From assembly GCF_963921235.1 (NCBI RefSeq), contig NC_086101.1, positions 26,970,001 through 27,034,000 on the forward strand: a stretch of DNA of 64,000 bases, given 5' to 3'. The notes beneath the pieces were generated by a model, which searched no databases, was not told where the DNA came from, and saw only the letters and a list, made by a program, of their open reading frames with translations. Below are positions 16,870 to 42,638 of this stretch, piece by piece (the stretch's first letter is position 1; the number at the start of each line of letters is the position of its first letter). Source of the DNA: Mobula hypostoma. Taxonomy: Eukaryota. Both the position numbers and the translations under genes were made by a program.

Positions 16870-17690
16870 GCCCTTTTGTTTTCACCACGTACAAAATGTG
16901 GCTTGTTGATTGTTGTATTTCACTGTTCCGGATGTCATTCCCATAGGAGTTGTCCTTGTTCCAGTGTGTTCTTAGCTGCAGTATCTTTCAGTTCCATTCA
17001 AACTCATTTTGTGCAATGACTGAACCAGCTGAGCCAGTGTCCAATTTCATTTTAATTAATTTGCCATTCATTTCTGGTGTATGTCATATTACTTCTCTCC
17101 TGTTAGCTTTCATATTGTAAACCTCAAGGCTTTCCAGTCCTGTGTCAGTCCCATCATTATCAAATTTTTCAAGAACAGCGTGCAGGTGTGTGCTCATTTT
17201 GAAACTGCAACATAACATTTATCTCTTTGTCTTCCATGTGCAGTCCATTTATTTTTGTCAGCCCAATATGCTCTTTATATATGTCCTACTTTGTTGCATT
17301 TTCTGCAGGTTACGCCTTTAAACCTGTATTGGTCTGATGCATGTGCGCGCCTGTCACAACAGTGACACAGTTTTTTGGCCAGGCAGGTTTCTGTTCAGAC
17401 ATTGCATTTTTGCTCATGCTCACTTTCATTCCTGACTGCAACTCAGTTGCATGTCTGTCTGATGTCTGCCATTGACACAGCAATTTCAACTGCTCTTTTA
17501 AATGTGTGCTTCAGTTTTAGGAGCCATTTTTGAATTCTCTCTTATAAGATCTCACAAGCTAGATGATCTTTCAATGCATTATTAAGCCCATTACTGCACT
17601 GATAATTCTCGGACAATCTCTCCAATTCAGCCACTTAAGCTGAAATGGACTCCCTTCCTAAAGTGTTATGCAATCAACAGTTGTTTCAGT
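16870..17690 (-). mobile_element. Gypsy/Ty3 internal fragment (gag C-terminus to aspartic protease), degenerate
   Basis: Minus strand shows decayed ALKDHLACEI (cf. ALRDRLVCGI), TFKRAVEIAVSM, a CCHC-knuckle remnant and NGKLIKMKLDTGSAGSVI (DTG protease motif). Confidence 0.7.
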
Positions 17691-17789
17691 TGTAAATGTT
17701 CCTGCGTTATATTCACAATATCTGCAAAGCTCATCTTGGCTGGATTGGTTGGAGCAGTTACACTTCTAAGCAAACTGCTTTTCCACCTA

Positions 17790-18513
17790 TTGCAAAGAAT
17801 AAGGAGCTTGATTCACTGAAGTTCGCCTACCTCCACAACAGGCCCACAGCAGATGCTATTTCACTGGCTCTCCAATTGGCTTTGGACCACCTGGACAACT
17901 GCAATGCATACAGCAGGCTGCTGTTTATCAAATATAGCTCGGCATTCAATTCCACCTTTCACCTCACCTACTAATCAAAAAGCTTCAAAGCCTGGGCCAC
18001 CCCACTTCCCTCTGCTACTTGTCCCTTGAATTCCTTATCTGGAGACCACAGTGCCGATCAATAATGGCATCTCCTCTTTATTGACAATCAACACAGGCAC
18101 ACCTCAAGGATATCTGCTTAGCTCATTGCTCTATTCTCCCTACACCTAAGACTGTGCGGCTAGACACAACTCAAGTACCACCTGTAAATTCGCCAGTGAC
18201 ACGAAAGTTGTTGGCAGAATCTCAGATGATGACCAGGAGGCACACAGAATTGAGATAGATTGGCTGGTTGAATGGTATTGCAACAACTAATTTGTACTCA
18301 ATATCAGCAAGACTTCAAGAAGGAGAACTCAGGAGAATACACTCTCATAGAGAAAGGGGGAGTCAGCACTGGAAAGGGTGAGCAGCTTTAAGTTCCTGTG
18401 TGCCAACATCTCCTAGGATTTATATTAGGTCCTACATGGATGTAATCTCAAAGAAAGCACACCAGCGGCTTTACTTCATTTGGAGTTTGAGGAGATTTGG
18501 TATGTCACTAAGG
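17790..18513 (+). mobile_element. Rex1/Babar LINE, left half (host of the nested stack)
   Basis: LDSLKFAYLHNRPTADAISLAL...RLLFIKYSSAFNS, PQGYLL, KFASDT, QRLYFIWSLRRFGMS; resumes at 40450 after the duplication TATGTCACTAAGG. Confidence 0.8.
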
Positions 18514-19104
18514 TGAGGTGAAGGCCTTTGTTGGTCAGAGTTGACCACGGATATTGTGCCCCAGCTGTCTAGATACACAAGCCTGGGCAACACGATATGG
18601 AGAGCGAGCTGTTGCCCATGTAGCAAGCTTCCCCTCTCCACGCATCTGATGAACCTGGAGGAATGGCAGAGACTGATACAGATTGGTACCAGCAGTGTTG
18701 CAGGAGTTGCCAGTCAGCATTGACTCAATTTAGGACTACCTTAGGAATACCAGCTCTGGATATTTCCCTTGGGGTTTATTCCCAAAGCCTTCCCCATGAG
18801 TGGGTACAGCTGCAAGACACCGAAGGTTTGAGATCAGAATTTTCCTTCTCCTAAGTAGAGTGCCAACCACAGCTGACAAGCCCCACCTGCCCAAAGTGAC
18901 AGGTTCTAAGGGCCCACCAGCAACGCCAGTTTGCCCTTTCTCCTGTCGGTGGAAACGGTTCTGCTGGGCTTAGTGGCTAAGCCACATGTGAAGGCCAGGA
19001 GCTGGACTTGGTTGTCAGAGGCTACTTGAGGAGATGCATGCCATTGGGAGCATTTAATGGGTAGTGGGAACTTTGTCCCCATTACCGTCCCCAGCCATAA
19101 TAAC
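18514..19104 (-). mobile_element. Non-coding SINE-like retroposon (possibly RTE-mobilised; family unassigned)
   Basis: Related in reverse complement to 62356-62743; short-repeat 3' tail (GGCCTTCACCTCA on the minus strand); 13-bp TSD TATGTCACTAAGG at 18501-18513 and 40450-40462. Confidence 0.65.
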
Positions 19105-20569
19105 CTTATGCAGATATCCCACCTCTCCCGGAAGTTCCGGGAGTCTCTCGCATATTAATAGTGGCTCCCTGATGCCCGCAAATTATATACCATATCCCAG
19201 AAATCAATAATTTTGAGAGCGAGAGAGAGAGAAAGCAAGCGAGAGAGCGAGAGAGAACGAGAGAGAAAGCAAGTGAGAGCGCGAGAGAGAGAGAGTGAGC
19301 ACGGGAACGACCACGAGAGAGAGAACAAGAGAAAGCAAGTGAGAGCGCGAGAGAGAAAGCGTGCGAGTGAGAGAGAGCGTGAGAGCGACCACGAGAGAGA
19401 GCAAGAAAGCGAGAGCGCGCGTGAGAGAGAGAGAGAGAGAGAGAGAGAACAAGTCATGGCAGAGTGTTCCAAAATAAGAAAATATAAAATGTACGTCACC
19501 TCAGACTACACTAAAGTGTATCCCTGCCTAATAGGGGTCAAAAATAATGACAGTGTTGCTCACTGCGCTGTTTGTAACAGTGACTTTTCTCTTGCCCATG
19601 GTGGGGTTAAGACTGTAAAAGACGTGTTGAGGTGAGTTTAACAGGTGTCACTCGTTCATTAGCATTGCTAACGTTATTTAAACTGTCGTCGTCAATGATG
19701 CCGTCACTCGCATCCCCTCTATTTCCCGCACTCCAGCCCTCACCCCATCCTCCCATCACCACAACAGGGACAGAGTTCCCCTTGTCCTCACCTACCACCC
19801 CACCAGCCTCCGGATCCAGCACATTATCCTCCGCAACTTCTGCCACCTTCAACAGGACCCCACCACAAAGCACATCTTTCCCTCTCCACGCCTCTTTGCT
19901 TTTAACAGGGATCGGTCCCTCCGCAACTCCCTGGTCCACACGTCCCTACCCACAGATCTCCCACCCGGCACTTATCCCTGTAAGCATAAGTGCTACACCT
20001 GTCCCTGCACCTCCTCTCTTGCCAACATTGCCCAAACTGTCATGGTCCGGTCCGTAAAGTCCGTATTCCGGTTCACGGTCTGCTCCATCAATCCTTGCTC
20101 CAGGTTTTCTTATCTACCCTGTTTCTGTTCTTGTTGAGCTAATTGAGGCAGCTGATGCTCGTTGGGGCTGGCTGCATAAATACCTTCAGAGACCCAGGCA
20201 TGGTGGCTGGACTATCCTGTCCTTACTCCTTGTATCCCTTGCTCTTCCTTCTGTTTCCTCGTCTGAAACCCTGTCTTGTCTTGCCGGTAACTCTCACCTC
20301 GCCTGAAGTTCTCGTCTCGCCTTGCTTTGCCAGAAGCTTCGCGTCGTCTGGCCTGCAGTCTTGTCCTGGAGGCACCCTGTACCTAGGTCCCTTCCTGACC
20401 CTTACCTCCGCCCAGGTAAGCCAGGCCATCTTGCCAATACCTGGGATTGGTTCTATCCCTTCCAGTCCCTTGTCTCTGCTGGGTGGAGATCTTCACCCTG
20501 CCCACGTGATTTGCTCCCTGCCTAGCAGGAGCCTGCCAAGCCTTGCCCCAGGTCTCCTGCTTCCAGCAT

Positions 20570-23500
20570 CGTCTCGCCTCGCCTCAAGGCTCCTGCCCCC
20601 AGCCTCGCCTCACCTCGCCTCAAGGCTCCTGCCCCTAGCCTCGCCTCGCCTCAAGGCTCCTACCCCAGCCTCGCCTCGCCTCGCCTCGCCTCAAGGCTCC
20701 TGCCCCCAGCCTCGCCTCGCCTCGCCTCAAGGCTCCTGCCCCTAGCCTCGCCTCGCCTCAAGGCTCCTACCCCAGCCTCGCCTCGCCTCGCCTCAAGGCT
20801 CCTGCCCCCAGCCTCGCCTCGCATCGCTTCAAGGGTCCTGCCCCCAGCCTCGACTCGCCTCAAGGCTCCTGCCCCCAGCCTCGACTCGCCTCAAGGCTCC
20901 TGCCCCCAGCCTGGACTCGCCTCAAGGCTCCTGCCCCCAGCCTCGCCTCACCTCAAGGCTCCTGCCCCCAGGCTCGCCTCGCCTCGCTTCAAGGCTCCTG
21001 CCCCCAGCCTCGCCTCGCCTCGCTTCTAGGCTCCTGCCCCCAGCCTCGCCTCGCATCGCTTCAAGGGTCCTGCCCCCAGCCTCGACTCGCCTCAAGGCTC
21101 CTGCCCCCAGCCTCGACTCGCCTCAAGGCTCCTGCCCCCAGCCTGGACTCGCCTCAAGGCTCCTGCCCCCAGCCTCGCCTCGCCTCAAGGCTCCTGCCCC
21201 CAGCCTCGCCTCGCCTCGCTTCAAGGCTCCTGCCCCCAGCCTCGCCTCGCCTCGCTTCAAGGCTCCTGCCCCCAGCCTCGCCTCGCCTCGCTTCAAGGCT
21301 CCTGCCCCCAGCCTCGCCTCGCCTCGCTTCAAGGCTCCTGCCCCCAGGCTCGCCTCGCCTCAAGGCTCCTGCCCCCAGCCTCGCCTCGCCTCAAGGCTCC
21401 TGCCCCCAGCCTCGCCTCACGTCGCCTCAAGGCTCCTGCCCCCAGCCTCACCTCGCCTCACCTCAAGGCTGCTGCCCCCATCCTCGCCTCGCCTCGCCTC
21501 AAGACTCCTCCCCACAGCCTTGCCTCCCCTCGCCTCAAGGCTCATACCCTCAGCCTCGCAGCCCGTCGCCTCAAGGCTCCTGCCCTCAGCCTCGCCTCAC
21601 CTCACCTCAAGGCTGCTGCCCTCAGCCTCACGACGCCTCCCCTCAAGGCTCCTGCCCCCAGCCTCGCCTCGCCTCACCTCAAGGCTCCTGCCCTCAGCCT
21701 CGCCTAGCCTCGCCTCAAGGCTCCTGTCCTCAGCCTCGCCTCGCCTCACCTCAAGGCTCCTGCCCCCAGCCTCGCCTCGTCTCGCCTCTATGCTCCTGCC
21801 CCCAGCCTCGCCTCGCCTCTACGCTCCTTTCCCCAGCCTCGCCTCGCCTCAAGGTTCCTGCCCCCAGCCTCGCCTCACCTCCCCTCAAGGCTCCTTCCCC
21901 CAGACTGAACTCGCCTCGCCTCGCCTCACCTCAAGGCTCCTGCCCTCAGCCTTGCCTCGCTTCGCCTCGCCTCAAGACTCTTGCCCTGAGCCACGGCTCG
22001 CCTCAGCTCAAGGCTCCTGCCCCCAACCTCATCTCGCCTCGCCTCAAGGCTCCTGCCCCCAGCCTTGCCTCACCTCTAAGCTCCTGCCCCAGCCTCGCCT
22101 CGCCTCAAGGCTCCTGCCCTCAGCCTCGCGTCGCCTCCCCTCAAGGCTCCTGCCCCAAGCCTCCCCTCACCACAAGGCCCCTGCCCCGAGCCTCGCCTCG
22201 CCTCAAGCCTCCAGCCCCCAGCCTCGCCTCAAGGCTCCTGCCCCCAGCCTCGTCTCGCCTCGCCGCAAGGCTCCTGCCCCCAACCTCACCTTGCCTCGCC
22301 TCAAGGCTCCTGCCCCCAGCCTCGCCTCGCCTCGCCTCAAGGCTCCTGCCCCCAGCCTCGCCTCGACTCGCCTCAAGACTCCTGCCCCCAGCCTCGCCTC
22401 GCCTCAAGGCTCCTGCCCCCAGCCTCGCCTCGACTCGCCTCAAGGCTCCTGCCCCCAGCCTCGCCTCGCCTCAAGGCTCCTGCCCCCAGCCTCGCCTCGC
22501 CTCAAGGCTCCTGCCCTCAGCCTCGCCTCGCCTCAAGGCTCCTACCCTCAGCCTCGCAGCCCGTCGCCTCAAGGCTCCTGCCCTCAGCCTAGCCTCACCT
22601 CACCTCAAGGCTACTGCCCTCAGCCTCACGACGCCTCCCCTCAAGGCTCCTGCCCTCAGCCTCACCTCACCTCGCCTCAAGGCTCCAGCCCCCAGCCTCG
22701 CCTCGCCTCACCTCAAGGCTCCTGCCCTCAGCCTCGCCTAGCCTCGCCTCAAGGCTCCTACCCTCAGCCTCGCAGCCCCTCGCCTCAAGGCTCCAGCCCT
22801 CAGCCTCGCCTCACCTCACCTCAAGGCTCCTGCCCTCAGCCTCGCGTCGCCTCTCCTCAAGGCTCCTGCCCTCAGCCTCGCCTCGCCTCAAGGCTCCTGT
22901 CCTCAGCCTCGCCTCGCCTCACGTCAAGGCTCCTGCCCCCAGCCTCGCCTCGTCTTGCCTCTACGCTCCTGCCCCCAGCCTCGCCTCACCTCTACGCTCC
23001 TCTCCCCAGCCTCGCCTCGCCTCAAGGTTCCTGCCCCCAGCCTCGCCTCACCTCGCCTCAAGGCTCCTTCCCCCAGCCTCATCTCGCCTCGCCTCGCCTC
23101 GCCTCAAGGCTCCTGACCTCAGCCTCGCCTCACCTCACCTCAAGGCTCCTGCCCTCAGCCTCGCCTCGCCTCACCTCAAGGCTCCTGCCCCCAAACTCAT
23201 CTCGCCTCGCCTCTAAGCTCCTGCCCCCAGCCTCGCCTCGCCTCTAAGCTCCTGCCCCCAGCCTTGCCTCGCCTCCAAGCTCCTGCCCCCAGCCTCGCCT
23301 CGCCTCAAGGCTCCTGCCCTCAGCCTCGCGTCGCCTCCCCTCAAGGCTCCTGCCCCCAGCCTCCCCTCACCACAAGGCTCCTGCCCCGAGCCTCGCCTCA
23401 CCTCAAGGCTCCTGCCCCCAGCCTCGCCTCAAGGCTCCTGCCCCCAGCCTCGTCTCGCCTCGCCTCCAGGCTCCTGCCCCCAGCTTCGCCTCACCTTAAT

Positions 23501-26500
23501 GCTCCTGCCCCGAGCCTCGCCTCGCCTCAAGGCTCCTGCGCCCAGCCTCGCCTCGCCTCAAGGCTCCTGCCCCCAACCTCACCTCGCCTCGCCTCAAGGC
23601 TCCTGCCCCCAGCCTCGCCTCGCCTCGCCTCAAGGCTCCTGCCCCCAGCCTCGCCTTGCCTCAAGGCTCCTGCCCCCAGCCTCGCCTCGCCTCAAGGCTC
23701 CTGCCCTCAGCCTCGCCTCGCGTCAAGGCTCCTGCCCTCAGCCTCGCCTCGCCTCAAGGCTCCTGCCCTCAGCCTCGCCTCACCTCTACGCTCCTGTCCC
23801 CAGCCTCGCCTCGCCTCAAGGTTCCTGCCCCGAGCCTTGCCTCACCTCAAGGCTCCTGCCCTCAGCTTCGCCTCGCCTCGCCTCAAGGCTCCTGCCCTCA
23901 GCCTCGCCTCACCTCACCTCAAGGCTCCTTCCCTCAGCCTCGCCTCGCCTCGCCTCAAGGCTCCTGCCCCCAAACTCATCTCGCCTCGCCTCTAAGCTCC
24001 TGCCCCCAGCCTCGCCTCGCCTCTAAACTCCTGCCCCCAGCCTCGCCTCGCCTCTAAGCTCCTGCCCCCAGCCTCGCCTCGCCTTTAAGCTCCTGCCCCC
24101 AGCCTCGCCTCGCCTCAAGGCTCCTGCCCTCAGCCTCGCGTAGCCTCCCCTCAAGGCTCCTGCCCCCAGACTCCCCTCACCACAAGGCTTCTGCCCCGAG
24201 CCTCGCCTCACCTCAAGGCTCCTGCCCCCAGCCTCGCCTCAAGGCTCCTGCCCCCAGCCTCGTCTCGACTCGCCTCCAGGCTCCTGCCCCCAGCCTCGCC
24301 TCGCCTCAAGGTTCCTGCCCCCAACCTCTCCTCGCCTCGCCTCAAGGCTCCTGCCCCCAGCCTCGCCTCGCCTCGCCTCACCTCAAGGCTCCTGCCCCCA
24401 GCCTCGCCTCGCCTCAAGGCTCCTGCCCTCAGCCTCGCCTCGCCTCAAGGCTCCTGCCCTCAGCCTCGCCTCGCCTCGCCTCAAGGCTCCAGCCCCCAGC
24501 CTCGTCTCGCCTCTAGGCTCCTGCCCCCATCCTCACCTCGCCTCTCAGCTCCGGCCCCCAGCCTCGCCTCGCCTCGCCTCAAGGCTCCTGGCCCCAGCCT
24601 CGCCTCGCCTCTAAGCTCCTGCCCCCAGCCTCGCCTCACCTCAAGGCTCCTGCCCCGAGCCTCGCCTCGCCTCAAGGCTCATGCCCCCAAACTCATCTCG
24701 CCTCGCCTCTAAGCTCCTGCCCCCAGCCTCGCCTCGCCTCTAAGCTCCTGCCCCCAGCGTTGCCTCGCCTCTAAGCTCCTGCCCCCAGCCTCGCCTTGCC
24801 TCAAGGCTCCTGCCCTCAGCCTCGCGTCGCCTCCCCTCAAGGCTCCTGCCCCCAGCCTCCCCTCACCACAAGGCTCCTGCCCCGAGCCTCGCCTCACCTC
24901 AAGGCTCCTGCCCCCAGCCTCGCCTCAAGGCTCCTGCCCCCAGCCTCGTCTCGCCTCGCCTCCAGGCTCCTGCCCCCAGCTTCGCCTCACCTTAATGCTC
25001 CTGCCCCGAGCCTCGCCTCGCCTCAAGGCTCCTGCGCCCAGCCTCGCCTCGCCTCAAGGCTCCTGCCCCCAACCTCACCTCGCCTCGCCTCAAGGCTCCT
25101 GCCCCCAGCCTCGCCTCGCCTCGCCTCAAGGCTCCTGCCCCCAGCCTCGCCTCACCTCAAGGCTCCTCCCCTCAGCCTCGCCTCACCTCAAGGCTCCTGC
25201 CCTCAGCCTCGCCTCGCCTCAAGGCTCCTGCCCTCAGCCTCGCCTCACCTCTACGCTCCTGTCCCCAGCCTCGCCTCGCCTCAAGGTTCCTGCCCCCAGC
25301 CTCGCCTCACCTCGCCTCAAGGCTCCTTCCCCCAGCCTCGCCTCGCCTCGCCTCGCCTCACCTCAAGGTTCCTGCCCCGAGCCTTGCCTCACCTCAAGGC
25401 TCCTGCCCTCAGCTTCGCCTCGGCTCGCCTCAAGGCCCCTGCCCTCAGCCTCGCCTCACCTCACCACAAGGCTCCTTCCCTCAGCCTCGCCTCGCCTCGC
25501 CTCAAGGCTCCTGCCCCCAAACTCATCTCGCCTCGCCTCTAAGCTCCTGCCCCCAGCCTCGCCTCGCCTCTAAGCTCCTGCCCCCAGCCTCGCCTCGCCT
25601 CTAAACTCCTGCCCCCAGCCTCGCCTCGGCTTTAAGCTCCTGCCCCCAGCCTCGCCTCGCCTCAAGGCTCCTGCCCTCAGCCTCGCGTAGCCTCCCCTCA
25701 AGGCTCCTGCCCCCAGCCTCCCCTCACCACAAGGCTCCTGCCCCGAGCCTCGCCTCACCTCAAGGCTCCTGCCCCCAGCCTCGCCTCAAGGCTCCTGCCC
25801 CCAGCCTCGTCTCGCCTCGCCTCCAGGCTCCTGCCCCCAGCCTCGCCTCGCCTCAAGGTTCCTGCCCCCAACCTCTCCTCGCCTCGCCTCAAGGCTCCTG
25901 CCCCCAGCCTCGCCTCGCCTCGCCTCAAGGCTCCTGCCCCCAGCCTCGCCTCGCCTCGCCTCAAGGCTCCTGCCCCCAGCCTCGCCTCGCCTCGCCTCAA
26001 GGCCCCTGCCCCCAGCCTCGCCTCGCCTCGCCTCAAGGCTCCTGCCCCCAGCCTCGCCTCGCCTCAAGACTCCTGCCCTCAGCCTCGCCTCGCCTCAAGG
26101 CTCCTGCCCTCAGCCTCGCCTCGCCTCGCCTCAAGGCTCCAGCCCCCAGCCTCGTCTCGCCTCTAGGCTCCTGCCCCCATCCTCACCTCGCCTCTCAGCT
26201 CCGGCCCCCAGCCTCGCCTCGCCTCGCCTCAAGGCTCCTGGCCCCAGCCTCGCCTCGCCTCTAAGCTCCTGCCCCCAGCCTCGCCTCACCTCAAGGCTCC
26301 TGCCCCGAGCCTCGCCTCACCTCAAGGCTCCTGCCCTCAGCCTTGCCTCGCTTCGCCTCGCCTCAAGGCTCTTGCCCTGAGCCTCGCCTCGCCTCACCTC
26401 AAGGCTCCTGCCCCCAACCTCATCTCGCCTCGCCTCAAGGCTCCTGCCCCCAGCCTTGCCTCACCTCTAAGCTCCTGCCCCAGCCTCGCCTCGCATCAAG

Positions 26501-32500: not shown

Positions 32501-35500
32501 CTCGCCTCGCCTCAAGGCTCCTGCCCCCAGCCTCGCCTCGCCTCGCCTCAAGGCTCCTGCCCCCAGCCTCGCCTCGCCTCAAGGCTCCTGCCCTCAGCCT
32601 CGCCTCACCTCAAGGCTCCTGCCCTCAGCCTCGCCTCGCCTCAAGGCTCCTGCCCTCAGCCTCGCCTCACCTCTACGCTCCTGTCCCCAGCCTCGCCTCG
32701 CCTCAAGGTTCCTGCCCCCAGCCTCGCCTCACCTCGCCTCAAGGCTCCTTCCCCCAGCCTCGCCTCGCCTCGCCTCGCCTCACCTCAAGGTTCCTGCCCC
32801 GAGCCTTGCCTCACCTCAAGGCTCCTGCCCTCAGCTTCGCCTCGCCTCTCCTCAAGGCTCCTGCCCTCAGCCTCGCCTCACCTCACCTCAAGGCTCCTTC
32901 GCTCAGCCTCGCCTCAAGGCTCCTGCCCTCAGCCTCGCCTCACCTCACCTCAAGGCTCCTTCCCTCAGCTTCGCCTTGCCTCGCCTCAAGGCTCCTGCCC
33001 TCAGCCTCGCCTCACCTCACCTCAAGGCTCCTGCCCTCAGCCTCGCCTCGCCTCAAGGCTCCTGCCCCCAAACTCATCTCGCCTCACCTCTAAGCTCCTG
33101 CCCCCAGCCTCGCCTCGCCTCTAAGCTCCTGCCCCCAGCCTCGCCTCGCCTTTAAGCTCCTGCCCCCAGCCTCGCCTCGCCTCTAAGCTCCTGCCCCCAG
33201 CCTCGCCTCGCCTTTAAGCTCCTGCCCCCAGCCTCGCCTCGCCTCAAGGCTCCTGCCCTCAGCCTCGCGTAGCCTCCCCTCAAGGCTCCTGCCCCCAGCC
33301 TCGCATCACCACAAGGCTCCTGCCCCGAGCCTCGCCTCACCTCAAGGCTCCTGCCCTCAGCCTCACCTCGCCTCGCCTCAAGGCTCCAGCCCCCAGCCTC
33401 GTCTCGCCTCTCGGCTCCTGCCCCCATCCTCACCTCGCCTCTCAGCTCCGGCCCCCAACCTCGCCTCGCCTCGCCTCAAGGCTCCTGGCCCCAGCCTCGC
33501 CTCGCCTCTAAGCTCCTGCCCCCAGCCTCGCCTCGCCTCGCCTCAAGGCTCCTGGCCCCAGCCTCGCCTCGCCTCAAGGCTCCTGGCCCCAGCCTCGCCT
33601 CGCCTCAATACTCCAGCCCCCAGCCTCGCCTCGCCTCGCCTCAAGGCTCCTACCCTCAGCCTCGCAGCCCCTCGCCTCAAGGCTCCTGCCCCCAGCCTTG
33701 CCTCGCCTCGAGGCTCATGCCCCCAGCCTCGCCTCAAGGCTCCTGCCCCCAGCCTCGCCTCACCTCAAGTCTGCTGCCCCCAGCCTCGCCTCAAGGCTCC
33801 TGCTCCCAGACTCACCTCGCCTCAAGGCTCCTGCCCCCAACCTCGCCTCGCCTGAAGGCTCCTTCCCCCAGCCTCGCCTCGCCTCAAGGCTCCTGCCCTC
33901 AGCCTCGCCTCGCCTCATCTCAAGGCTCCTGCCCCCAGCCTCGCCTCGCCTCAAGGCTCCTGCCCCCAGCCTCGCCTCGCCTCAAGGCTCCTGCCCCCAT
34001 CCTCGCCTCACGTCGCCTCAAGGCTCCTGCCCCCAGCCTCGCCTCGCCTCGCCTCAAGGTTCCTGCCCCCAGCCTCGCCTCGCCTCGCCTCAAGGCACCT
34101 GCCCCCAGCCTCACCTCGCCTCAAGGCTCCTGCCCTCCGCTTCGCCTCGCCTCAAGGCTCCTGCCCCCAGCCTCGCCTCGCCTCAAGGCTCCTGTCCTCA
34201 ACCTCGCTTCACCTCAAGGCTGCTGCCCTCAACCTTGCCTAACCTCAAGGCTCCTGCCCTCAACCTCGCCTCACTTCAAGGCTCCTGCCCCCAGCCTCGC
34301 CTCGCCTCGCCTCAAGGCTCCTGCCCCCAGCCTCGCCTTGCCTGAAGGCTCCTGCCCCCAGCCTTGCCTCCCCTCGCCTCAAGGCTCCTACCCTCAGCCT
34401 CGCAGCCCTTCGCCTCAAGGCTCCTGCCCTCAGCCTCGCCTCACCTCACCTCAAGGCTACTGCCCTCAGCCTCGCGTCGCCTCTCCTCAAGGCTCCTGCC
34501 CTCAGCCTCACCTCACCTCGCCTCAAGGCTGCAGCCCCCAGCCTTGCCTCGCCTCACCTCAAGGCTCCTGCCCTCAGCCTCGCCTCGCCTCGATCAAGGC
34601 TCCTGTCCTCAGCCTCGCCTCGCCTCACCTCAAGGCTCCTGCCCCCAGCCTCGCCTCGTCTCGCCTCTACGCTCCTGCCCCCAGCCTCGCCTCACCTCTA
34701 CGCTCCTCTCCCCAGCCTCGCCTCCCCTCGCCTCAAGGCTCCTTCCCCCAGCCTCATCTCGCCTCGCCTCGCCTCGCCTCAAGGCTCCTGCTCTCAGCCT
34801 CGCCTCACCTCACCTCAAGGCTCCTGCCCTCAGCCTCGCCTCGCCTCGCCTCAAGGCTCCTGCCCCCAAACTCATCTCGCCTCGCCTCTAAGCTCCTGCC
34901 CCCAGCCTCGCCTCGCCTCTAAGCTCCTGCCCCCAGCCTCGCGTCGCCTCCCCTCAAGGCTCCTGCCCCCAGCCTCCCCTCACCACAAGGCTCCTGCCCC
35001 GAGCCTCGCCTCACCTCAAGGCTCCTGCCCCCAGCCTCGCCTCAAGGCTCCTGCCCCCAGCCTCGTCTCGCCTCAAGGCTCCTGCCCCCAGCCTCGTCTC
35101 GCCTCGCCTCCAGGCTCCTGCCCCCAGCTTCGCCTCACCTTAATGCTCCTGCCCCGAGCCTCGCCTCGCCTCAAGGCTCCTGCGCCCAGCCTCGCCTCGC
35201 CTCAAGGCTCCTGCCCCCAACCTCCCCTCGCCTCGCCTCAAGGCTCCTGCCCCCAGCCTCGCCTCGCCTCGCCTCAAGGCTCCTGCCCCCAGCCTCGCCT
35301 CGCCTCAAGGCTCCTGCCCTCAGCCTCGCCTCACCTCAAGGCTCCTGCCCTCAGCCTCGCCTCGCCTCAAGGCTCCTGCCCTCAGCCTCGCCTCACCTCT
35401 ACGCTCCTGTCCCCAGCCTCGCCTCGCCTCAAGGTTCCTGCCCCCAGCCTCGCCTCACCTCGCCTCAAGGCTCCTTCCCCCAGCCTCGCCTCGCCTCGCC

Positions 35501-38390
35501 TCGCCTCACCTCAAGGTTCCTGCCCCGAGCCTTGCCTCACCTCAAGGCTCCTGCCCTCAGCTTCGCCTCGCCTCTCCTCAAGGCTCCTGCCCTCAGCCTC
35601 GCCTCACCTCACCTCAAGGCTCCTTCGCTCAGCCTCGCCTCAAGGCTCCTGCCCTCAGCCTCGCCTCACCTCACCTCAAGGCTCCTTCCCTCAGCTTCGC
35701 CTTGCCTCGCCTCAAGGCTCCTGCCCTCAGCCTCGCCTCACCTCACCTCAAGGCTCCTGCCCTCAGCCTCGCCTCGCCTCGCCTCAAGGCTCCTGCCCCC
35801 AAACTCATCTCGCCTCACCTCTAAGCTCCTGCCCCCAGCCTCGCCTTGCCTCTAAGCTCCTGCCCCCAGCCTCGCCTCGCCTCTAAGCTCCTGCCCCCAG
35901 CCTCGCCTCGCCTTTAAGCTCCTGCCCCCAGCCTCGCCTCGCCTCAAGGCTCCTGCCCTCAGCCTCGCGTAGCCTCCCCTCAAGGCTCCTGCCCCCAGCC
36001 TCGCATCACCACAAGGCTCCTGCCCCGAGCCTCGCCTCACCTCAAGGCTCCTGCCCCCAGCCTCGCCTCAAGCCTCCTGCTCCCAGCCTCGTCTCGCCTC
36101 GCCTCCAGGCTCCTGCCCCCAGCGTCGCCTCGCCTCAAGGCTCCTGCCCCCAACCTCTCCTCGTCTCGCCTCAAGGCTCCTGCCCCCAGCCTCGCCTTGC
36201 CTCGCCTCAAGGCTCCTGCCCTCAGCCTCGCCTCGCCTCAAGGCTCCTGCCCTCAGCCTCGCCTCGCCTCGCCTCGCCTCAAGGCTCCAGCCCCCAGCCT
36301 CGTCTCGCCTCTAGGCTCCTGCCCCCATCCTCACCTCGCCTCTCAGCTCCGGCCCCCAGCCTCGCCTCGTCTCGCCTCAAGGCTCCTGGCCCCAGCCTCG
36401 CCTCGCCTCTAAGCTCCTGCCCCCAGCCTCGCCTCGCCTCGCCTCTAGGCTCCAGGCCCCAGCCTCGCCTCGCCTCAAGGCTCCTGGCCCCAGCCTCGCC
36501 TCGCCTCAATACTCCTGCCCCCAGCCTCGCCTCGCCTCGCCTCAAGGCTCCTACCCTCAGCCTTGCAGCCCCTCGCCTCAAGGCTCCTGCCCCCAGCCTT
36601 GCCTCGCCTCGCCTACCCCCAGCCTCGCCTCGCCTCAAGGCTCCTGCCCCGAGCCTCGCCTTGCCTCAAGGCTCCTGCCCCCAACCTCACCTCGCCGCGC
36701 CTCAAGGCTCCTGCCCCCAACCTCACCTCGCCTCGCCTCAAGGCTCCTGCACCCAGCCTCGCCTCGCCTCTAGGCTCCTGCCCCCAGCCTCATCTCGCCT
36801 CGCCTCAAGGCTCCTGCCCCCAGCCTCGCCTCGCCTCAAGGCTCCTGCCCCCAGCCTCGCCTCGCCTCAAGGCTGCTGCCCCCAGCCTTGCCTCAAGGTT
36901 CCTGCCCCCAGCCTCACCTCACCTCAAGGCTCCTGCCCCCAGCCTCGCCTCACCTCAAGGCTCCTGCTCCCAGCCTCGCCTCACCTTAAGGCTGCTGCCC
37001 CCAGCCTCGCCTCAAGGCTCCTGCTCCCAGACTCACCTCTCCTCAAGGCTCCTGCCGCCAACCTCACCTCGCCTCGCCTCAAGGCTCCGTCCCCCAGCCT
37101 TGCCTCGCCTCAAGGCTCCGGCCCCCAGCCTCGCTTCGCCTCAAGGCTCCGGCCCCCAGTCTCGCCTCGCCTCAAGGCTCCTGCCCTCAGCCCTGCCTTG
37201 CCTCGTCTCTTGCCTAGCCTCAAGCCTGAAGACTCCAGCCTCGTCCTGCCTGCCTGCCATGCCTCGTCCTTGCCTAGTTCTGGGGTCCGAGCCACAGGCA
37301 AGACCCGGGTACCCCAGTCTCGCCTCGCCTCTAGGCTCCTGCCCCCATCCTCACCTCGCCTCAAGGCTACTGCACCCATCCTCACCTCGCCTCTCAGCTC
37401 CGGCCCCCAGCCTCGCCTCGCCTCGCCTCAAGGCTCCTGGCCCCAGCCTCGCCTCGCCTCAATACTCCTGCCCCCAACCTCGCCTCGCCTCGCCTCAAGG
37501 CTCCTACCCTCAGCCTCGCAGCCCCTCGCCTCAAGGCTCCTGCCCCCAGCCTTGCCTCGCCTCGCCTCGAGGCTCCTACCCCTTGCCTCGCCTCGCCTCG
37601 CCACAAGGCTCCTGCCCCCAGCCTCGCCTTGCCTCAAGGCTCCTGCCCCCAACCTCACCTCGCCTCGCCTCAAGGCTCCTACCCCCAGCCTCGCCTCGCC
37701 TCGCCACAAGGCTCCTGCCCCGAGCCTCGCCTTGCCTCAAGGCTCCTGCCCCTAACCTCACCTCGCCTCGCCACAAGGCTCCTGCCCCCAGCCTCGCCTC
37801 ACCTCACCTCAAGGCTCCTGCCCTCAGCCTCGCCTCGCCTCGCCTCAAGGCTCCTGCCCCCAACCTCACCTCGTCTCGCCTCAAGGCTCCTGCACCCAGC
37901 CTCGCCTCGCCTCTAGGCTCCTGCCCCCAGCCTCGCCTCACCTCAAGGCTCCTGCCCCCAGCCTCGCCTCGCCTCAAGGCTCCTGCCCCCAGCCTCGCCT
38001 CGCCTCAAGGCTGCTGCCCCCAGCCTCGCCTCAAGGTTCCTGCCCCCAGCCTCACCTCACCTCAAGGCTCCTGCCCCCAGCCTCGCCTCACCTCAAGGCT
38101 CCTGCCCCCAGCCTCGCCTCACCTCAAGGCTCCTGCCCCCAGCCTCGCCTCACCTCAAGGCTCCTGCCCCCAGCCTCGCCTCACCTTAAGGCTGCTGCCC
38201 CCAGCCTCGCCTCAAGGCTCCTGTTCCCAGACTCACCTCGCCTCAAGGCTCCTGCCCCCAACCTCGCCTCGCCTCGCCTCAAGGCTCCAGCCCCCAGCCT
38301 CGCCTCGCCTCAAGGCTCCGGCCCCCAGCCTCGCCTCGCCTCAAGGCTCCGGCCCCCAGTCTCGCCTCGCCTCAAGGCTCCTGCCCTCAG
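20570..38390. repeat. GC-rich satellite: monomer CAAGGCTCCTGCCCCCAGCCT + (CGCCT)n, mostly 26/31/36 bp, with higher-order repeats
   Basis: Read directly across ~17.8 kb; roughly 550-600 monomers estimated from length. Many variants (CCCTC, CACCT, TGCCT, CTAAGC, CTACGC). One non-monomer block at 37191-37312. Confidence 0.97.
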
Positions 38391-38569
38391 CCCTGCCTTG
38401 CCTCGTCTCTTGCCTAGCCTCAAGCCTGAATACTCCAGCCTCGTCCTGCCTGCCTGCCATGCCTCATCCTTGCCTAGTTCTGGGGTCCGAGCCACAGGCA
38501 AGACCCGGGTACTGGGTCCTTGTCCAGTCTCTGGCTTGGAGTCTATCCAGCCTCCAGTCTCCAGCATAG

Positions 38570-39340
38570 CCTCTAGCCTGAGGACTCCAGCCTCCAGCCT
38601 AGCCTCTAGCCTGAAGACTCCAGCCTCCTGCCTGGCCTCTAGCCTGAAGACTCCAGCCTCCTGCCTAGCCTCTAGCCTGAAGACTCCAGCCTCCTGCCTA
38701 GCCTCTAGCCTCTAGCCAAGCCAAGCCAAGCCTCGCCTCTAGCCTCTAGCCAAGCCAAGCCAAGTCTCTAGCCTCTTGCCAAGCCAAGTCTCTAGCCTCT
38801 AGCCTCTTGCCAAGCCAAGCCAAGTCTCTAGTCTCTAGCCTCTAGCCAAGCCAAGCCAAGTCTCTAGTCTCTAGCCTCTAGCCAAGCCAAGCCTAGCCTC
38901 TAGCCAAGCCAAGCCAAGCCTCTAGCCTCTAGCCAAGCCTCTAGCCTCTAGCCTCTTGCCAAGCCAAGTCTCTAGCCTCTAGCCTCTTGCCAAGCCGTCT
39001 CTAGCCTCTAGCCTCTTGCCAAGCCAAGCCAAGTCTCTAGTCTCTTGCCAAGCCAAGTCTCTAGCCTCTAGCCTCTTGCCAAGCCAAGTCAAGTCTCTAG
39101 CCTCTAGCCTCTAGCCTCATGCCAAGCCAGGTCTCTAGCCTCTTACCTCTTGTCAAGCCAAGCCACGTCTCTAGACTCTAGCCTCTAGCCAAGCCAAGCC
39201 AAGTTTCTAGCCTCTAGCCTCTAGCCTCTTGCCAAGCCAAGCCAAGTCTCTAGCCTCTAGCCTCTAGCCTCTTGCCAAGCCATGTCTCTGGCCTCTAGCC
39301 TTTTGCCAAGCCAAGCCAAGTCTCTAGCCTCTAGCCTCAA
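38570..39340. repeat. Second repeat zone: 33-bp unit (GCCTCTAGCCTGAAGACTCCAGCCTCCTGCCTA) x4-5, then interleaved GCCAA and GCCTCTA/GTCTCTA units
   Basis: Seen directly; the 33-mer gives the 11-aa LASSLKTPASC repeat in the ORF track. Confidence 0.9.
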
Positions 39341-40219
39341 GCCTGAAGACACCAGCCTCGTCCTGCCTGCCAAGCCTCGTCCTTGCCTAGTTCTGGGGTC
39401 TGAGCCAGAGGCAAGACCAGGTACTGAGTCCTTGTCCAGTCTCTAGCTCAGAGTCCAAGCCCGGGATGCTGGCTCTCTTGTCCAGTCTTGTTCCAGGTTC
39501 CTGGTTTTCCTGTCCATGTCCTTGCCCTCAGCCTGTATCCTAGTCCTGTCCCTAGTACTTTAGTGTCTGTGTCTTGCACTTGGGTCCGTTCCCAGCCACT
39601 GCCTTCTGACACAAACAGTCCTTCCAGGTGAGGCAACACTTCACTTGTCAGTCTGTTGGGGTCATCTATTGCATCCAGTGCTCCTGATGTGGCCTCCTCT
39701 ACATCAGTGAAACCCGACGCGGATTGGGGGACCGCTTCTTCGAGCACCTCCACTCTGTCCGTCACAACAGACAGGATCTCCCAGTAGCCACCCACTTCAA
39801 CTCTGCTTCCCATTCACATTCAGATATATCCATACATGGCCTCCTCTACTGCCATGATGAGGCTAAACTCAGGTTGGAGGAGCAACACCTCATACACCGT
39901 CTGGGTAGTCTCCAGCCCCTTGCTATGAACATAGAATTCTCCAACTTCCAGTAATTCCCTCCCCCTCCCTTCCTCTATCCCTATTTCACTCTGCCCCTCC
40001 CCCAGCTGCCTATCACCTCCCTCTTGGTTCCACCTCCTTCTACTACCCATTGTGTTTTCCCCTATTCCTTCTTCACCTTTCCTGCCTATCAGCTCCATGC
40101 TTCCCCCCTCCCCCACCCCTTTGTCTTTCTCCTTACTGATTTTTCACCTGGAACCTACCAGCCTTCTCCTTCCCACTCTCCCCCCACCTTCTTTATAGGG
40201 TCTCTCACCCTTCCCTCTA

Positions 40220-40256
40220 CAGTCCTGACAAGGGTTCCGGCCCGAAACATTGACTG
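40220..40256 (+). ncRNA. Degenerate minimal hammerhead ribozyme of the Penelope terminus (probably inactive)
   Basis: CAGTC CTGACAA GGGTTCCGGCCC GAAA CATT GACTG versus the intact copy at 61551; core CTGACGA and GAAACGTC are mutated. Confidence 0.6.
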
Positions 40257-40449
40257 ATCTTTTCCACGGATGCTGCCCAACCTGCTGAGTTCCTCCAGCG
40301 TGTTGTGAGCGTTATTTAAACTAGCTGACTAGCTGCTAAGGAGCTACTCTATTGCAGACATCCCACCTCTACCGGAAGTTCTGGGAATCTCCCACAAATT
40401 GATGGTGCTACCTCCCTGAAATGAGTTTTTGCAGGGTGGGATGTCTGCT

Positions 40450-40890
40450 TATGTCACTAAGGATTCTAGTAAATTTCTACAGATGTACCATGGAGATCAT
40501 TCTGACCGATCTGATATGAAGACTCCATCGCAGAGGACCAAAACAGGTTCCCTGGAAAGTTATTCTCAGTCAGCTCCATTACGGGCGAATCCCTGTACAC
40601 CATCGGAAGACACCTTCAAAATGCGCTGTCTCATGAGGAACTCTCAGCATCCGGGATAGGCCCTCTTATCATCACTACCATTAACGAGGTGATACAGGAG
40701 CCTGAAGACCGACAGTCAACGTCTTAGCAACATCTTTCCCTCTGCGCCATCAGACTTCTGAGCGGGCAATGAACACATGAACACTGTCTCACCTTTTCTC
40801 TTTCTATTTACTCACTTCATGTTACTTTCAGAATTTTTGTCGCGCACTGATACTCAAAACAACACGTTTGTGATAATAAACCTGATTCTG
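40450..40890 (+). mobile_element. Rex1/Babar LINE, right half and 3' end
   Basis: Continues the 17790-18513 copy (MSLRILVNFYRCTMEIILT-like); ends AATAAACCTGATTCTGATT. Confidence 0.75.
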
Positions 40891-41259
40891 ATTTGGAGGC
40901 TCCTGAAGACAGCGGAATGAGAACTGATTGGAAAAGTGATGATATTTTCGAGTTCTGCAGAAGTGTAGGAAGCAACCGCCCTGTTGTTATCAGTGTATCT
41001 GAAAAAGATTTGGAGAAATGCGCCCCCCAGCAGGTCAGAGACAAGCAATAGTTTACGTCTGTGCGATTGCCTTTGATCTCGAGATAGTGTTGAATGTTAA
41101 TGGTTTGTTTCTTGGTGGGAAGGCGGGGTCGAGAGTCATTTGCTTGAACTTGGCGTTGCAATATTATTTTTCCGTAGTGTGAATCTAGTGTCGAACAGCG
41201 ATCGTATACGGTCAATGAAGTATTTAACTCTTACGTAAATTTAGATAGTCCACTCGCTC

Positions 41260-41268
41260 TTCCCGGAA
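41260..41268 (+). promoter_or_regulatory. GAS (STAT) palindrome TTCCCGGAA overlapping an ETS core CCGGAAG, in a CpG-containing proximal promoter
   Basis: Exact TTCN3GAA match 135 bp upstream of the ATG at 41403; function not demonstrated. Confidence 0.45.
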
Positions 41269-41402
41269 GCACCGAACTACCTGAGCTGCTGCGGAGCTGA
41301 GGTCCATCCCTAAGCCGAGACTTGGACGAGTATCAATACGGCATTTAAACACTCATTCCAGAAACTCAACTTACTCTAACAGTAAACACGGCCTCCGACA
41401 AA

Positions 41403-41469
41403 ATGCCATTGAAAGAAGTTTCTGGGCTGTGCAGCTTCTATCTTTTTACCTACCTCGTTGTTGTTAACG
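41403..41469 (+). CDS. Exon 1 (signal peptide) of an Ig-superfamily receptor
   Basis: AAAATGC start; MPLKEVSGLCSFYLFTYLVVVN-(A); phase-1 donor G|GTAAGA matches the phase-1 acceptor at 42639. Confidence 0.75.
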
Positions 41470-42606: not shown

Positions 42607-42638
42607 ATAAATTAAGAGGATTGCTATTTTTCCTTTAG

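What the first reader, a model, noticed from the sequence alone, without database searches (positions are those of the whole stretch)
17790..40890. Five-deep nested insertion stack with four TSDs still intact
The Rex/Babar LINE is split by a SINE-like element (TSD TATGTCACTAAGG, 18501/40450). The hAT element landed in that TSD/5' junction (CTTATG, 19105/40448). A Penelope element entered the hAT intron (CGTTATTTAAACT, 19672/40310). A Gypsy solo LTR entered the Penelope GIY-YIG region (CAAAC, 20033/39612), and the satellite then grew inside the LTR. Removing each layer restores the host sequence. This gives an unambiguous relative chronology of five element classes at one site, adding ~22 kb just upstream of an immune-type gene.
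Basis: seen in the sequence. Interest (0 to 1): 0.75.

Follow-up and report, generated by a model that had tools for sequence, protein, structure and literature searches.

The report
Nested stack of five transposons
In a ray genome, an old LINE fragment was hit four times in a row by jumping genes, each landing inside or at the edge of the one before, and a repeat array then grew to 18 kb in the innermost one; the stack is real and tidy, but this kind of structure is common and well understood.

Summary
All four direct repeats lie at the stated coordinates and each abuts a break in homology that was defined independently.

- **LINE:** removing 18514-40462 and keeping one 13-mer restores an ungapped Pfam PF09004 match. 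It also restores the spacing seen in about 300 other LINE copies per genome.
- **hAT:** uninterrupted copies in the same species read straight across the Penelope insertion site.
- **Penelope:** other copies read straight across the insertion site of the LTR-like element. CAAAC is Penelope sequence on both sides.
- **hAT site:** the 6-bp repeat rebuilds the outer 13-mer.

The insertion order is therefore LINE, then a 593-bp repeat, then hAT, then Penelope-like, then an LTR-like element, then array growth.

- "SINE-like" and "Gypsy" are untested guesses.
- The hAT duplication is 6 bp, not the canonical 8.
- The Penelope reading frame is not restored, because a separate 5-nt deletion lies beside the junction.
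- Divergence does not clearly fall inward.
- A cut-and-paste hAT could have carried its inner layers in from another site.
- No read or contig bridges a junction.

Nested insertions and the chronology they give are textbook material. The scan had already flagged 20038-39611 of this window as a solo LTR holding a satellite. Interest is low.

The parts
17790..18513 (+). Left part of a 5'-truncated, decayed Rex1/Babar-like LINE (RT region). Its last 13 nt (18501-18513) are the left copy of the TSD TATGTCACTAAGG.
   Evidence: RT-like translation with many stops and frameshifts. It is 67% identical at protein level to another copy at 9870-10004. The left piece alone matches PF09004 positions 8-27. 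The protein motifs encoded by the published Rex1 primers, YSSAFNS and QRLYFIW, lie about 554 bp apart, against a published amplicon of about 550 bp.
18514..19106 (.). Together with everything nested in it, it is flanked by the 13-bp TSD.
   Evidence: The core 18577-18891 is 69% identical to 62356-62673 on the minus strand. No tRNA or Rfam match. No coding signal in six frames. Class and orientation are unknown.
19105..19110 (.). Left copy of the 6-bp hAT TSD CTTATG. It is made of the last 2 nt of the 593-bp repeat plus the first 4 nt (TATG) of the LINE 13-mer.
   Evidence: and the sequence. The right copy at 40448-40453 overlaps the 13-mer at 40450-40462.
19111..19684 (+). Left arm of an internally deleted hAT derivative. 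It holds the 13-bp TIR at 19111-19123, a GA-rich microsatellite at 19215-19448, an exon-1-like ORF from the ATG at 19456 to 19632, and a donor-like AG|GTGAGT at 19630-19637. The last 13 nt are the left Penelope TSD (19672-19684).
   Evidence: TIR pair CAGAYATCCCACC at 19111 and 40447. A second 5' end at 7562-7682 is 87.6% identical. The peptide hits the N-termini of P0006 and P0022, which carry Dimer_Tnp_hAT.
19685..20037 (+). Left part of a 5'-truncated Penelope-like element: the end of the RT-EN linker with the CX3CxxC motif. The last 5 nt are the left CAAAC TSD (20033-20037).
   Evidence: 75% identical to the sibling copy at 60642-60965. Translation. Motif definitions from PMC8557442.
20038..39611 (.). 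LTR-like element (TGTCA...TGACA) swollen to 19.6 kb. It consists of unique ends at 20038-20540 and 39339-39611, the main 36/31/67-bp array at 20540-38410, a roughly 130-bp unit present twice (38414-38545 and 39331-39455), and a second minisatellite at 38546-39338.
   Evidence: The ends are not repeated inside the block. 39440-39611 is high-copy in three of four genomes, and other copies also end in ...TGACA. Blocks of 2.8-2.96 kb within the array are 95-98% identical.
39612..40309 (+). Right part of the Penelope-like element: right CAAAC copy (39612-39616), GIY-YIG nuclease region, 3' UTR with a decayed hammerhead-like stretch, and the 3' end ...GTGTTGTGAG.
   Evidence: 77% identical to sibling 60989-61343. 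Loose ends from 400-570 contigs per genome start exactly at 39612. The 3' end matches the sibling's ...CGTGTTTGAG, and there is no similarity beyond 40309.
40310..40447 (+). Right arm of the hAT derivative: right Penelope TSD (40310-40322), an internal direct copy of the 5' end (40355-40419), and the 3' TIR (40435-40447).
   Evidence: In organism A, 33 contigs carry the uninterrupted hAT sequence leading into 40310.
40448..40895 (+). Right hAT TSD (40448-40453), right LINE TSD (40450-40462), then the rest of the LINE: the end of ORF2, the 3' UTR and a conserved 3' tail near 40870-40895.
   Evidence: Translation. The joined peptide matches PF09004 positions 8-41 without a gap at 34.2 bits. Depth falls to single-copy level by 40958.

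Best explanation
This is a real nested cluster of transposable elements in a batoid (ray) genome, built by four successive insertions and then by growth of a tandem array in place.

1. A 5'-truncated Rex1/Babar-like LINE copy decayed until it was roughly 15-20% away from its family consensus.
2. A 593-bp interspersed repeat of unknown class inserted into its ORF2 tail. This duplicated 13 bp, as expected for insertion primed at staggered nicks in the target.
3. A roughly 0.7-kb internally deleted hAT derivative cut and pasted itself exactly at that repeat's 3' junction and duplicated 6 bp.
4. A roughly 1.05-kb 5'-truncated Penelope-like element inserted 39 bp past the donor-like site of the hAT exon 1 and duplicated 13 bp. 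Its nuclease has the linker-motif layout of the Neptune/Nematis clades.
5. An element with TG..CA ends inserted between the Penelope linker zinc-finger-like motif and the GIY-YIG core and duplicated 5 bp. It is most simply read as a retrotransposon LTR, now solo.
6. A GC-rich minisatellite of 31-36 bp inside that element then expanded to 17.9 kb. Part of the growth came from tandem duplication of blocks of about 2.8-2.96 kb.

What is shown: the four duplications, the homology breaks, the host restorations and the block duplications. What is inferred: the mechanisms, the solo-LTR history, and that every event happened at this locus. No function is implied. The cluster sits about 1.8 kb upstream of an Ig V-set exon.
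For: **Repeats.** The four repeats are at the stated places and identical.

**LINE.**
- With one 13-mer kept, the reading frame runs on across the junction.
- The joined 48-residue peptide matches PF09004 positions 8-41 without a gap at 34.2 bits. The left piece alone scores 19.9 bits, below the cut-off of 21.
- Keeping two copies or none breaks the frame.
- The consensus of 280-380 other LINE copies in each of four genomes reads GAGATTTGG, then 21 nt, then AAATTTC. That is the same length as this copy with one 13-mer kept.

**hAT split by Penelope.** In organism A, 33 contigs read ...CAGGTGTCATTCATTCATTAGCATAGCTAA straight into 40310 with agreement 0.93. This matches 19642-19671 at 27 of 30 positions.

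**Penelope split by the LTR-like element.**
- 400-570 contigs per genome read ...CCATTCAGGGCCC straight into CAAACAG at 39612. The sibling copy in the window does the same.
- The left flank GCCCAAAC matches the family's CCCCAAAC at 7 of 8 positions, so CAAAC is Penelope sequence on both sides.

**hAT arrival.** Its left duplication carries TATG, the first 4 nt of the LINE 13-mer. The hAT therefore arrived after the 593-bp repeat.

**Class evidence.**
- hAT: the peptide is 40% identical over 50 residues to the N-terminus of a 691-residue protein that carries Dimer_Tnp_hAT.
- Penelope-like: VIY...YIS (GIY-YIG) with two cysteines between the two motifs, and CX3CxxC upstream, as defined in PMC8557442.

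**Array growth in place.** Blocks 28427-31193 and 31194-34149 are 97.7% identical, against 89% for control blocks.
Against: - The hAT duplication is 6 bp, not the canonical 8. An 8-bp duplication that later lost 2 bp cannot be ruled out.
- The Penelope reading frame is not restored. A 5-nt gap (CAGGG) lies 8 nt upstream of the junction. If both CAAAC copies are kept, length and frame happen to match the sibling, but the left flank then matches at only 1 of 8 positions.
- The 593-bp layer has no class. It may be composite, since only 315 bp are shared with its sibling.
- The left end of the LTR-like element was not checked against other copies. No coding relative ties it to Gypsy or to any other LTR clade.
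- Crude divergence does not fall inward. In 25-30-nt samples against mixed-subfamily consensuses, LINE differs by about 20%, hAT by about 10% and Penelope by about 24%. Identity to siblings in the window is 70%, 69%, 88% and 75-77% for LINE, the 593-bp repeat, hAT and Penelope.
- No contig bridges any junction. The Logan contigs are short unitigs, so the order and the array length rest on the assembly alone.
Confidence: 0.85

Rival explanations
1. Composite arrival. The Penelope fragment, and perhaps the LTR-like element, entered the hAT copy at another locus, and the hAT then moved here carrying them. In that case the nesting orders the insertion events but does not show that all of them happened at this site.
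For: hAT elements move by cut and paste and need only their ends. Both TIRs are intact and identical over 13 bp apart from one Y position. Before the array grew, the composite would have been only about 3 kb long. A search with 60 nt centred on the LTR/Penelope junction found 2 of 4 sampled words in at least eight organisms, which could mean that the junction is multi-copy.
Against: rests on 4 words. Even the likely source sample holds only 2 of them. Words with just 1-3 nt on one side of the junction can come from ordinary copies of either repeat. Hundreds of Penelope copies and 33 hAT copies lack the respective insertions. No second copy of any junction exists in the window.
Confidence: 0.1
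2. The innermost 19.6-kb block is not a solo LTR. It would be another kind of insertion that makes a 5-bp duplication, or a non-autonomous element such as a TRIM or LARD remnant, and it already carried a tandem array when it arrived.
For: No gag, pol, primer-binding site or polypurine tract is present. The two unique ends share no similarity with each other. No full-length relative was available. The class rests only on TG..CA ends, a 5-bp inverted terminus, a 5-bp duplication and high copy number.
Against: TG..CA ends with a 4-6-bp duplication are the hallmark of integrase-mediated LTR insertion (general knowledge). Other copies in organism G also end in ...TGACA and then diverge. A single unit with unique ends is what a solo LTR looks like.
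Confidence: 0.2
3. Assembly artefact. The two sides of the satellite were joined wrongly, or the array length is wrong.
For: Arrays of 18 kb at 70% G+C are hard to assemble. No read or contig laid here bridges a junction or the array.
Against: Four nested pairs of flanks match across the array, and the hosts they restore agree with outside references. That is very unlikely if the two sides came from different loci. Only the array length remains open to error.
Confidence: 0.03

Closest known systems
Nested transposon clusters used for relative dating (maize intergenic clusters; the tools REANNOTATE and TEnest)
   Same: Younger elements interrupt older ones. Removing them in turn rebuilds each host, and the nesting level gives the order of insertion. 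PMC2672092 describes this as common across eukaryotes and automates it.
   Different: Here the layers belong to five different element types rather than mostly LTR elements. All four duplications are perfect, and the site is in a ray genome. No complete LTR pair is present, so no absolute date can be given.
Satellite DNA born from tandem repeats inside retrotransposons (PMC7004042)
   Same: A short tandem repeat carried inside a retroelement-like sequence has been amplified into a long array. The array is still flanked by the element's unique ends.
   Different: That work concerns plant Ogre elements and genome-wide satellites. Here there is a single 17.9-kb array, the host element's class is unproven, and spread of the repeat to other loci was not tested.
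Canonical endonuclease-bearing Penelope-like elements, Neptune/Nematis type (PMC8557442)
   Same: A GIY-YIG nuclease with two cysteines between GIY and YIG, a CX2-5CxxC motif upstream, frequent 5' truncation, and target-site duplications of variable length.
   Different: This copy is only the last 1.05 kb or so. It has stops, YIS in place of YIG, and a hammerhead-like stretch too decayed to score in Rfam.
hAT superfamily non-autonomous derivatives (Ds-like elements)
   Same: Short TIRs beginning with CAG, subterminal repeats, an internal deletion that keeps both ends, and an N-terminal peptide shared with proteins that carry the hAT dimerisation domain.
   Different: The duplication is 6 bp instead of the 8 bp that defines Ac/Ds-type insertions (PMC3260210). 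The fifth TIR base is T or C, not G.

Membership tests
Rex1/Babar LINE clade | RT domains 3-7 bounded by the motifs that the Rex1 primers RTX1-F1 and RTX1-R3 encode, about 550 bp apart | tested here: met
   The primers (PMC4635592) translate to FSSAFNT and SRLFLLR. This copy has YSSAFNS at 17933 and QRLYFIW at 18463, a span of about 554 bp. The match is at protein level only; the primers do not match at DNA level.
Rex1/Babar LINE clade | Phylogenetic placement of the RT with reference Rex1/Babar sequences | not testable with these tools
   No reference LINE library was available. PF09004 matches the region after the RT, but it is not a clade marker.
SINE | A head derived from a pol III gene (tRNA, 5S or 7SL) with A and B boxes | tested here: not met
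   ARAGORN found no tRNA. Rfam at E<=1 found nothing in 17000-20600.
SINE | A 3' tail shared with a partner LINE, or an A-rich or simple-repeat tail | tested here: not met
   Neither end has such a tail. No similarity to any LINE 3' end in the window.
hAT superfamily | 8-bp target-site duplication | tested here: not met
   Only 6 bp (CTTATG) are duplicated in register. The 8-mers ACCTTATG and CTTATGTC differ. Loss of 2 bp after insertion cannot be excluded.
hAT superfamily | Short terminal inverted repeats | tested here: met
   A 13-bp TIR, CAGAYATCCCACC, lies at 19111 and 40447. The same 5' end occurs at 7562.
hAT superfamily | Transposase with the hAT C-terminal dimerisation domain | tested here: inconclusive
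   This copy has lost the transposase body. Its exon-1 peptide matches the N-termini of P0006 and P0022, which carry PF05699.
Penelope-like elements (EN+) | C-terminal GIY-YIG nuclease with two cysteines (of the CCHH motif) between GIY and YIG | tested here: met
   This copy reads VIYCIQCS*CGLLYIS and the sibling reads VIHYVRCS*CGLLYIG. The definition is from PMC8557442. Pfam's GIY-YIG model did not score the stop-free pieces.
Penelope-like elements (EN+) | Reverse transcriptase related to telomerase RT | not testable with these tools
   This copy is 5'-truncated before the RT core. Only the end of the RT-EN linker is present.
Penelope-like elements (EN+) | Hammerhead ribozyme motif in the terminal region | tested here: not met
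   Rfam at E<=5 found no hammerhead in 39300-41500. A decayed CTGACAA...CCGAAAC stretch is visible at about 40222-40250.
LTR retrotransposon solo LTR (reader: Gypsy) | TG..CA ends with a short inverted terminus and a 4-6-bp target-site duplication | tested here: met
   TGTCA at 20038 and TGACA at 39607-39611, with CAAAC on both sides. CAAAC is shown to be Penelope sequence.
LTR retrotransposon solo LTR (reader: Gypsy) | Full-length relatives in which two such units flank gag-pol with the Gypsy domain order | not testable with these tools
   No other copy in the window. No genome-wide search was available. Sequence look-ups in the scan's notes came back blank.

The most novel reading that the evidence does not exclude
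The 17.9-kb array is GC-rich and strongly strand-asymmetric, and it arose inside a mobile element. It could be a young, still-growing hypervariable locus. Sitting about 1.8 kb upstream of an Ig V-set receptor exon, it might influence that gene's chromatin or expression, or vary in length between individuals and between ray species.
Probability: 0.1. Interest if true: 0.45.

Novelty: already known. Interest (0 to 1): 0.2.

Why it matters
The locus is a clean example of dating by interruption in a cartilaginous fish. It shows that a Rex1-like LINE, an unclassified repeat, a hAT family, a Penelope-like family and an LTR-like family were active in that order of insertion.

All 74 nt of the duplications are unchanged. 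By contrast, the LINE had drifted about 15-20% from its family before the first hit. This suggests that the four insertions came late and close together, or that this lineage mutates slowly.

The locus could help calibrate a repeat library for rays. It also records a satellite growing inside a mobile element. It does not change any concept, because nested insertions and the chronology they give are standard knowledge.

Tried and rejected
- **SINE signals.** Rfam and tRNA scans of 17000-20600 found nothing. Six-frame translation of the 593-bp repeat showed no coding signal.
- **Hammerhead.** An Rfam scan of 39300-41500 gave only chance-level hits and no hammerhead.
- **Pfam on stop-free pieces.** Only PF09004 and the V-set domain scored. 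RVT_1 and GIY-YIG did not.
- **Penelope running past 40309 into the 13-mer.** Rejected. There is no similarity to the sibling's tail beyond chance: 1988 of 2000 shuffles scored as well.
- **No 5-bp duplication, both CAAAC copies being original sequence.** Rejected. Length and frame would match the sibling, but the left flank would match the family at 1 of 8 positions rather than 7 of 8.
- **A separate 93-bp hAT MITE at 40355-40447.** Rejected. Its own flanks share no duplication.
- **LTR-internal-LTR structure.** Rejected. The ends are not repeated inside the block.
- **Protein search with the Penelope nuclease piece.** It gave only 3 short hits. One sits inside a VKORC1L1 gene model of the stingray Hemitrygon akajei.
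- **Cluster look-up of the hAT hits.** No names were returned.
- **Notes of this scan searched by sequence.** Blank, which means nothing.
- **Junction-word search for shared or empty sites.** Inconclusive. Only 4 words were sampled, and the likely source sample holds only 2 of them.
- **Reads laid on the right flank.** They gave family consensuses but no contig that bridges a junction, so the assembly could not be validated and no empty site was seen.
Full report
**What is there**

- TATGTCACTAAGG at 18501 and 40450
- CTTATG at 19105 and 40448
- CGTTATTTAAACT at 19672 and 40310
- CAAAC at 20033 and 39612

Between 20540 and 38410 lies a tandem array with periods of 36, 31 and 67 bp. It has about 70% G+C and a GC skew near -0.5. 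A second minisatellite lies at 38546-39338.

A repeated 13-mer is not evidence by itself. Outside the arrays the window holds 294 non-simple exact 13-mer pairs. I therefore asked, for each pair, whether it abuts a break in homology that can be defined without reference to the repeat. I also asked whether removing the insert and one repeat copy rebuilds the host. Earlier notes of this scan describe the genome as a stingray or devil ray.

**Layer 1 and 2: the LINE and the first insertion**

17790-18513 and 40463 to about 40895 translate to a decayed reverse transcriptase and ORF2 tail. Several results bear on the junction:
- The left piece ends ...QRLYFIWSLRRFGMSLR. The right piece starts MSLRILVNFYRC. 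MSLR is encoded by the 13-mer.
- The left piece alone matches Pfam PF09004 positions 8-27 at 19.9 bits, below the cut-off of 21.
- With one 13-mer kept, the joined peptide matches positions 8-41 without a gap at 34.2 bits.
- Keeping two copies or none breaks the frame.
- A related LINE on the minus strand at 63400-63999 has the same 16-residue spacing between RLYF and FY.
- When contigs of four ray genomes were laid at 85% likeness, 280-380 other copies per genome read GAGATTTGG, then 21 nt, then AAATTTC. That is the length this copy has with one 13-mer.

That consensus also shows two substitutions inside the 13-mer that both copies share. The LINE had therefore already drifted before it was hit.

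The Rex1/Babar label fits. The motifs encoded by the published Rex1 primers (PMC4635592) are present at protein level about 554 bp apart, against an amplicon of about 550 bp. I could not place the RT on a tree.

**The 593-bp layer**

18514-19106 is a repeat. Its core, 18577-18891, is 69% identical to 62356-62673 on the minus strand. It has no tRNA, 5S or other Rfam signal. It has no A-rich or LINE-like tail and no coding signal. 'SINE-like' is a guess. I call it an unclassified interspersed repeat, possibly composite. Earlier notes, which I did not check, say that Penelope insertions in this genome often make 13-14-bp duplications. The same machinery may therefore have inserted this layer.

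**Layer 3: the hAT**

A 13-bp terminal inverted repeat, CAGAYATCCCACC, sits at 19111 and 40447. The same 5' end occurs at 7562-7682 at 87.6% identity. The element keeps 574 bp on the left:
- a GA-rich microsatellite
- an ORF running from the ATG at 19456 to 19632
- a donor-like AG|GTGAGT at 19630-19637

It keeps 125 bp on the right, which include a direct copy of its own 5' end. It is therefore an internally deleted derivative. 'Intron' is a loose term for the stretch that the Penelope hit.

The peptide found 32 relatives among 1.84 billion representative proteins. Two long ones, P0006 and P0022, carry the hAT dimerisation domain and match through their N-termini. The match to P0022 is 40% identical over 50 residues.

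The duplication is 6 bp, not the 8 bp that defines hAT insertions (PMC3260210). The two 8-mers are out of register. This is either a true 6-bp duplication or an 8-bp one that lost 2 bp. The sequence before insertion is the same under either reading.

The left copy of the duplication ends in TATG, the first 4 nt of the LINE 13-mer, and follows the last 2 nt of the 593-bp repeat. The hAT therefore arrived after that repeat, at its 3' junction.

**Layer 4: the Penelope-like element**

19685-20037 plus 39612-40309 is the last 1.05 kb or so of a Penelope-like element. It shows:
- CX3CxxC (CKHKCYTC) upstream
- VIY...YIS, equivalent to GIY-YIG, with two cysteines between the motifs
- the conserved residues downstream

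This is the layout PMC8557442 gives for canonical EN+ elements of the Neptune/Nematis type. That paper also states that such elements are often 5'-truncated and make duplications of variable length.

A sibling copy lies in the window. It aligns by BLAST over 60642-61626, and by eye it extends to about 60598-61688. It is 75-77% identical. Its 3' end...CGTGTTTGAG, matches the ...CGTGTTGTGAG found here at 40309. Beyond 40309 there is no similarity above chance.

In organism A, 33 contigs carry uninterrupted hAT sequence running straight into 40310, with agreement 0.93. Their 30-nt lead-in matches 19642-19671 at 27 positions. The 13-mer is therefore hAT sequence that was duplicated by the Penelope insertion.

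**Layer 5: the LTR-like element**

20038-39611 starts TGTCA and ends TGACA. In every one of the four genomes, 400-570 Penelope copies depart from the window exactly at 39612. Before that point they read ...CCATTCAGGGCCC, then CAAACAG. The sibling in the window does the same.

The left flank here reads ...CAACATTGCCCAAAC. Its last 8 nt match the family's CCCCAAAC at 7 positions. CAAAC is therefore Penelope sequence on both sides, a true 5-bp duplication.

The host is not rebuilt perfectly. This copy lacks 5 nt (CAGGG) just upstream, so the frame shifts. Keeping both CAAAC copies would restore length and frame by coincidence, but the flank would then match at 1 of 8 positions. I reject that reading.

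Other observations on this layer:
- 39440-39611 is high-copy in three of the four genomes. In organism G, other copies also end ...TGACA and then diverge. The right end is therefore the end of a family.
- The two unique ends do not recur inside the block. This fits a single unit such as a solo LTR.
- Nothing ties the element to Gypsy. There is no coding sequence, no full-length relative, and the left end was not checked.

**The array**

The array sits between unique parts of the LTR-like element, and those parts already contain degenerate versions of the unit. Blocks 28427-31193 and 31194-34149 are 97.7% identical. The next pair of blocks is 95.4% identical, and control blocks are 89% identical. 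At least part of the growth was therefore recent tandem duplication of 2.8-2.96-kb blocks in place.

**Order and timing**

The nesting gives this order of insertion events: LINE, 593-bp repeat, hAT, Penelope-like element, LTR-like element, array growth.

There is one caveat. A hAT moves by cut and paste, so it could have picked up the inner layers elsewhere and carried them in. I rate this at about 0.1. A search with 60 nt across the LTR/Penelope junction found 2 of 4 sampled words in many organisms, but also only 2 of 4 in the likely source sample. That result cannot decide the matter.

The predicted fall of divergence inward is not seen in crude measures. Short samples against mixed consensuses give about 20% for LINE, 10% for hAT and 24% for Penelope. 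Identity to siblings in the window is 70%, 69%, 88% and 75-77% for LINE, the 593-bp repeat, hAT and Penelope. These measures are too small and too confounded by subfamilies to count against the order.

All 74 nt of the duplications are unchanged. If the four events were of similar age, post-insertion divergence is probably below about 4%. For the outer pair alone the bound is about 11%. These figures are my own calculation.

Organism B differs by about 2-3% in the single-copy flank. It holds 0.54 of the sampled words of 39440-41000, against 0.73 in organism A, the best holder and likely source species. This suggests that B shares most of the stack, but it is not proof.

**Assembly**

No laid contig bridges a junction, because the Logan contigs are short unitigs. 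However, four nested pairs of flanks agree across the array, and they rebuild hosts that match outside references. A false join of two different loci is therefore very unlikely. Only the array length is open to doubt.

**Context and verdict**

An Ig V-set exon lies at 42656-43030 (Pfam E = 1.2e-9), about 1.8 kb past the end of the LINE. Nothing here shows any effect on that gene.

Nested insertions, and their use for relative dating, are common and are automated by standard tools (PMC2672092). Satellites that grow out of repeats inside retroelements are also documented (PMC7004042). The scan had already flagged 20038-39611 as a solo LTR holding a satellite. The finding is correct in its core, loose in its labels, and ordinary in kind.

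Noticed in passing
window 60598-61688: A second, longer Penelope-like copy, 75-77% identical to the split one. It has YIG intact and a longer 3' tail, and it served here as the uninterrupted reference.
   Followed up: partly
window 63400-63999 (minus strand): A Rex1-like LINE tail with an open stretch of about 134 residues that matches PF09004 positions 8-41 (36.3 bits). It is better preserved than the split LINE.
   Followed up: partly
window 7562-7682: An isolated 5' end of the same hAT family, 87.6% identical over 121 bp. It has no matching 3' end anywhere in the window.
   Followed up: partly
window 20022-20037 vs 60970-60990: A 5-nt deletion (CAGGG) in the Penelope copy lies 8 nt upstream of the LTR-like insertion. 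It has the same length as the duplication, so total length and frame are preserved by coincidence if both CAAAC copies are counted.
   Followed up: yes
window 28427-36900: The array contains tandem blocks of 2.8-2.96 kb that are 95-98% identical, against 89% for control blocks. This is a higher-order layer of recent growth.
   Followed up: partly
window 20540-38410 (minus strand): Read on the G-rich strand, the unit contains GGGGCAGGAGCC. From memory, this resembles the GGGCAGGAXG core of classical hypervariable minisatellites. I did not test it.
   Followed up: no
window 42656-43030: An open exon encoding an Ig V-set domain (Pfam E = 1.2e-9), about 1.8 kb downstream of the stack. Earlier notes of the scan describe a receptor gene at 41403-52281.
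   Followed up: partly
window 44089-45036 (minus strand): A 315-residue open reading frame that looks like the region before the RT of another LINE family. It was not examined.
   Followed up: no
window 61968-62129: An assembly gap of 162 N next to a (CA)n microsatellite, beside the sibling of the 593-bp repeat. It was left untouched.
   Followed up: no
P0001 and P0038: Public gene models have swallowed these repeats. A 560-residue LEM/thymopoietin model contains the hAT exon-1 peptide. A Hemitrygon akajei VKORC1L1 isoform contains a Penelope nuclease fragment.
   Followed up: no
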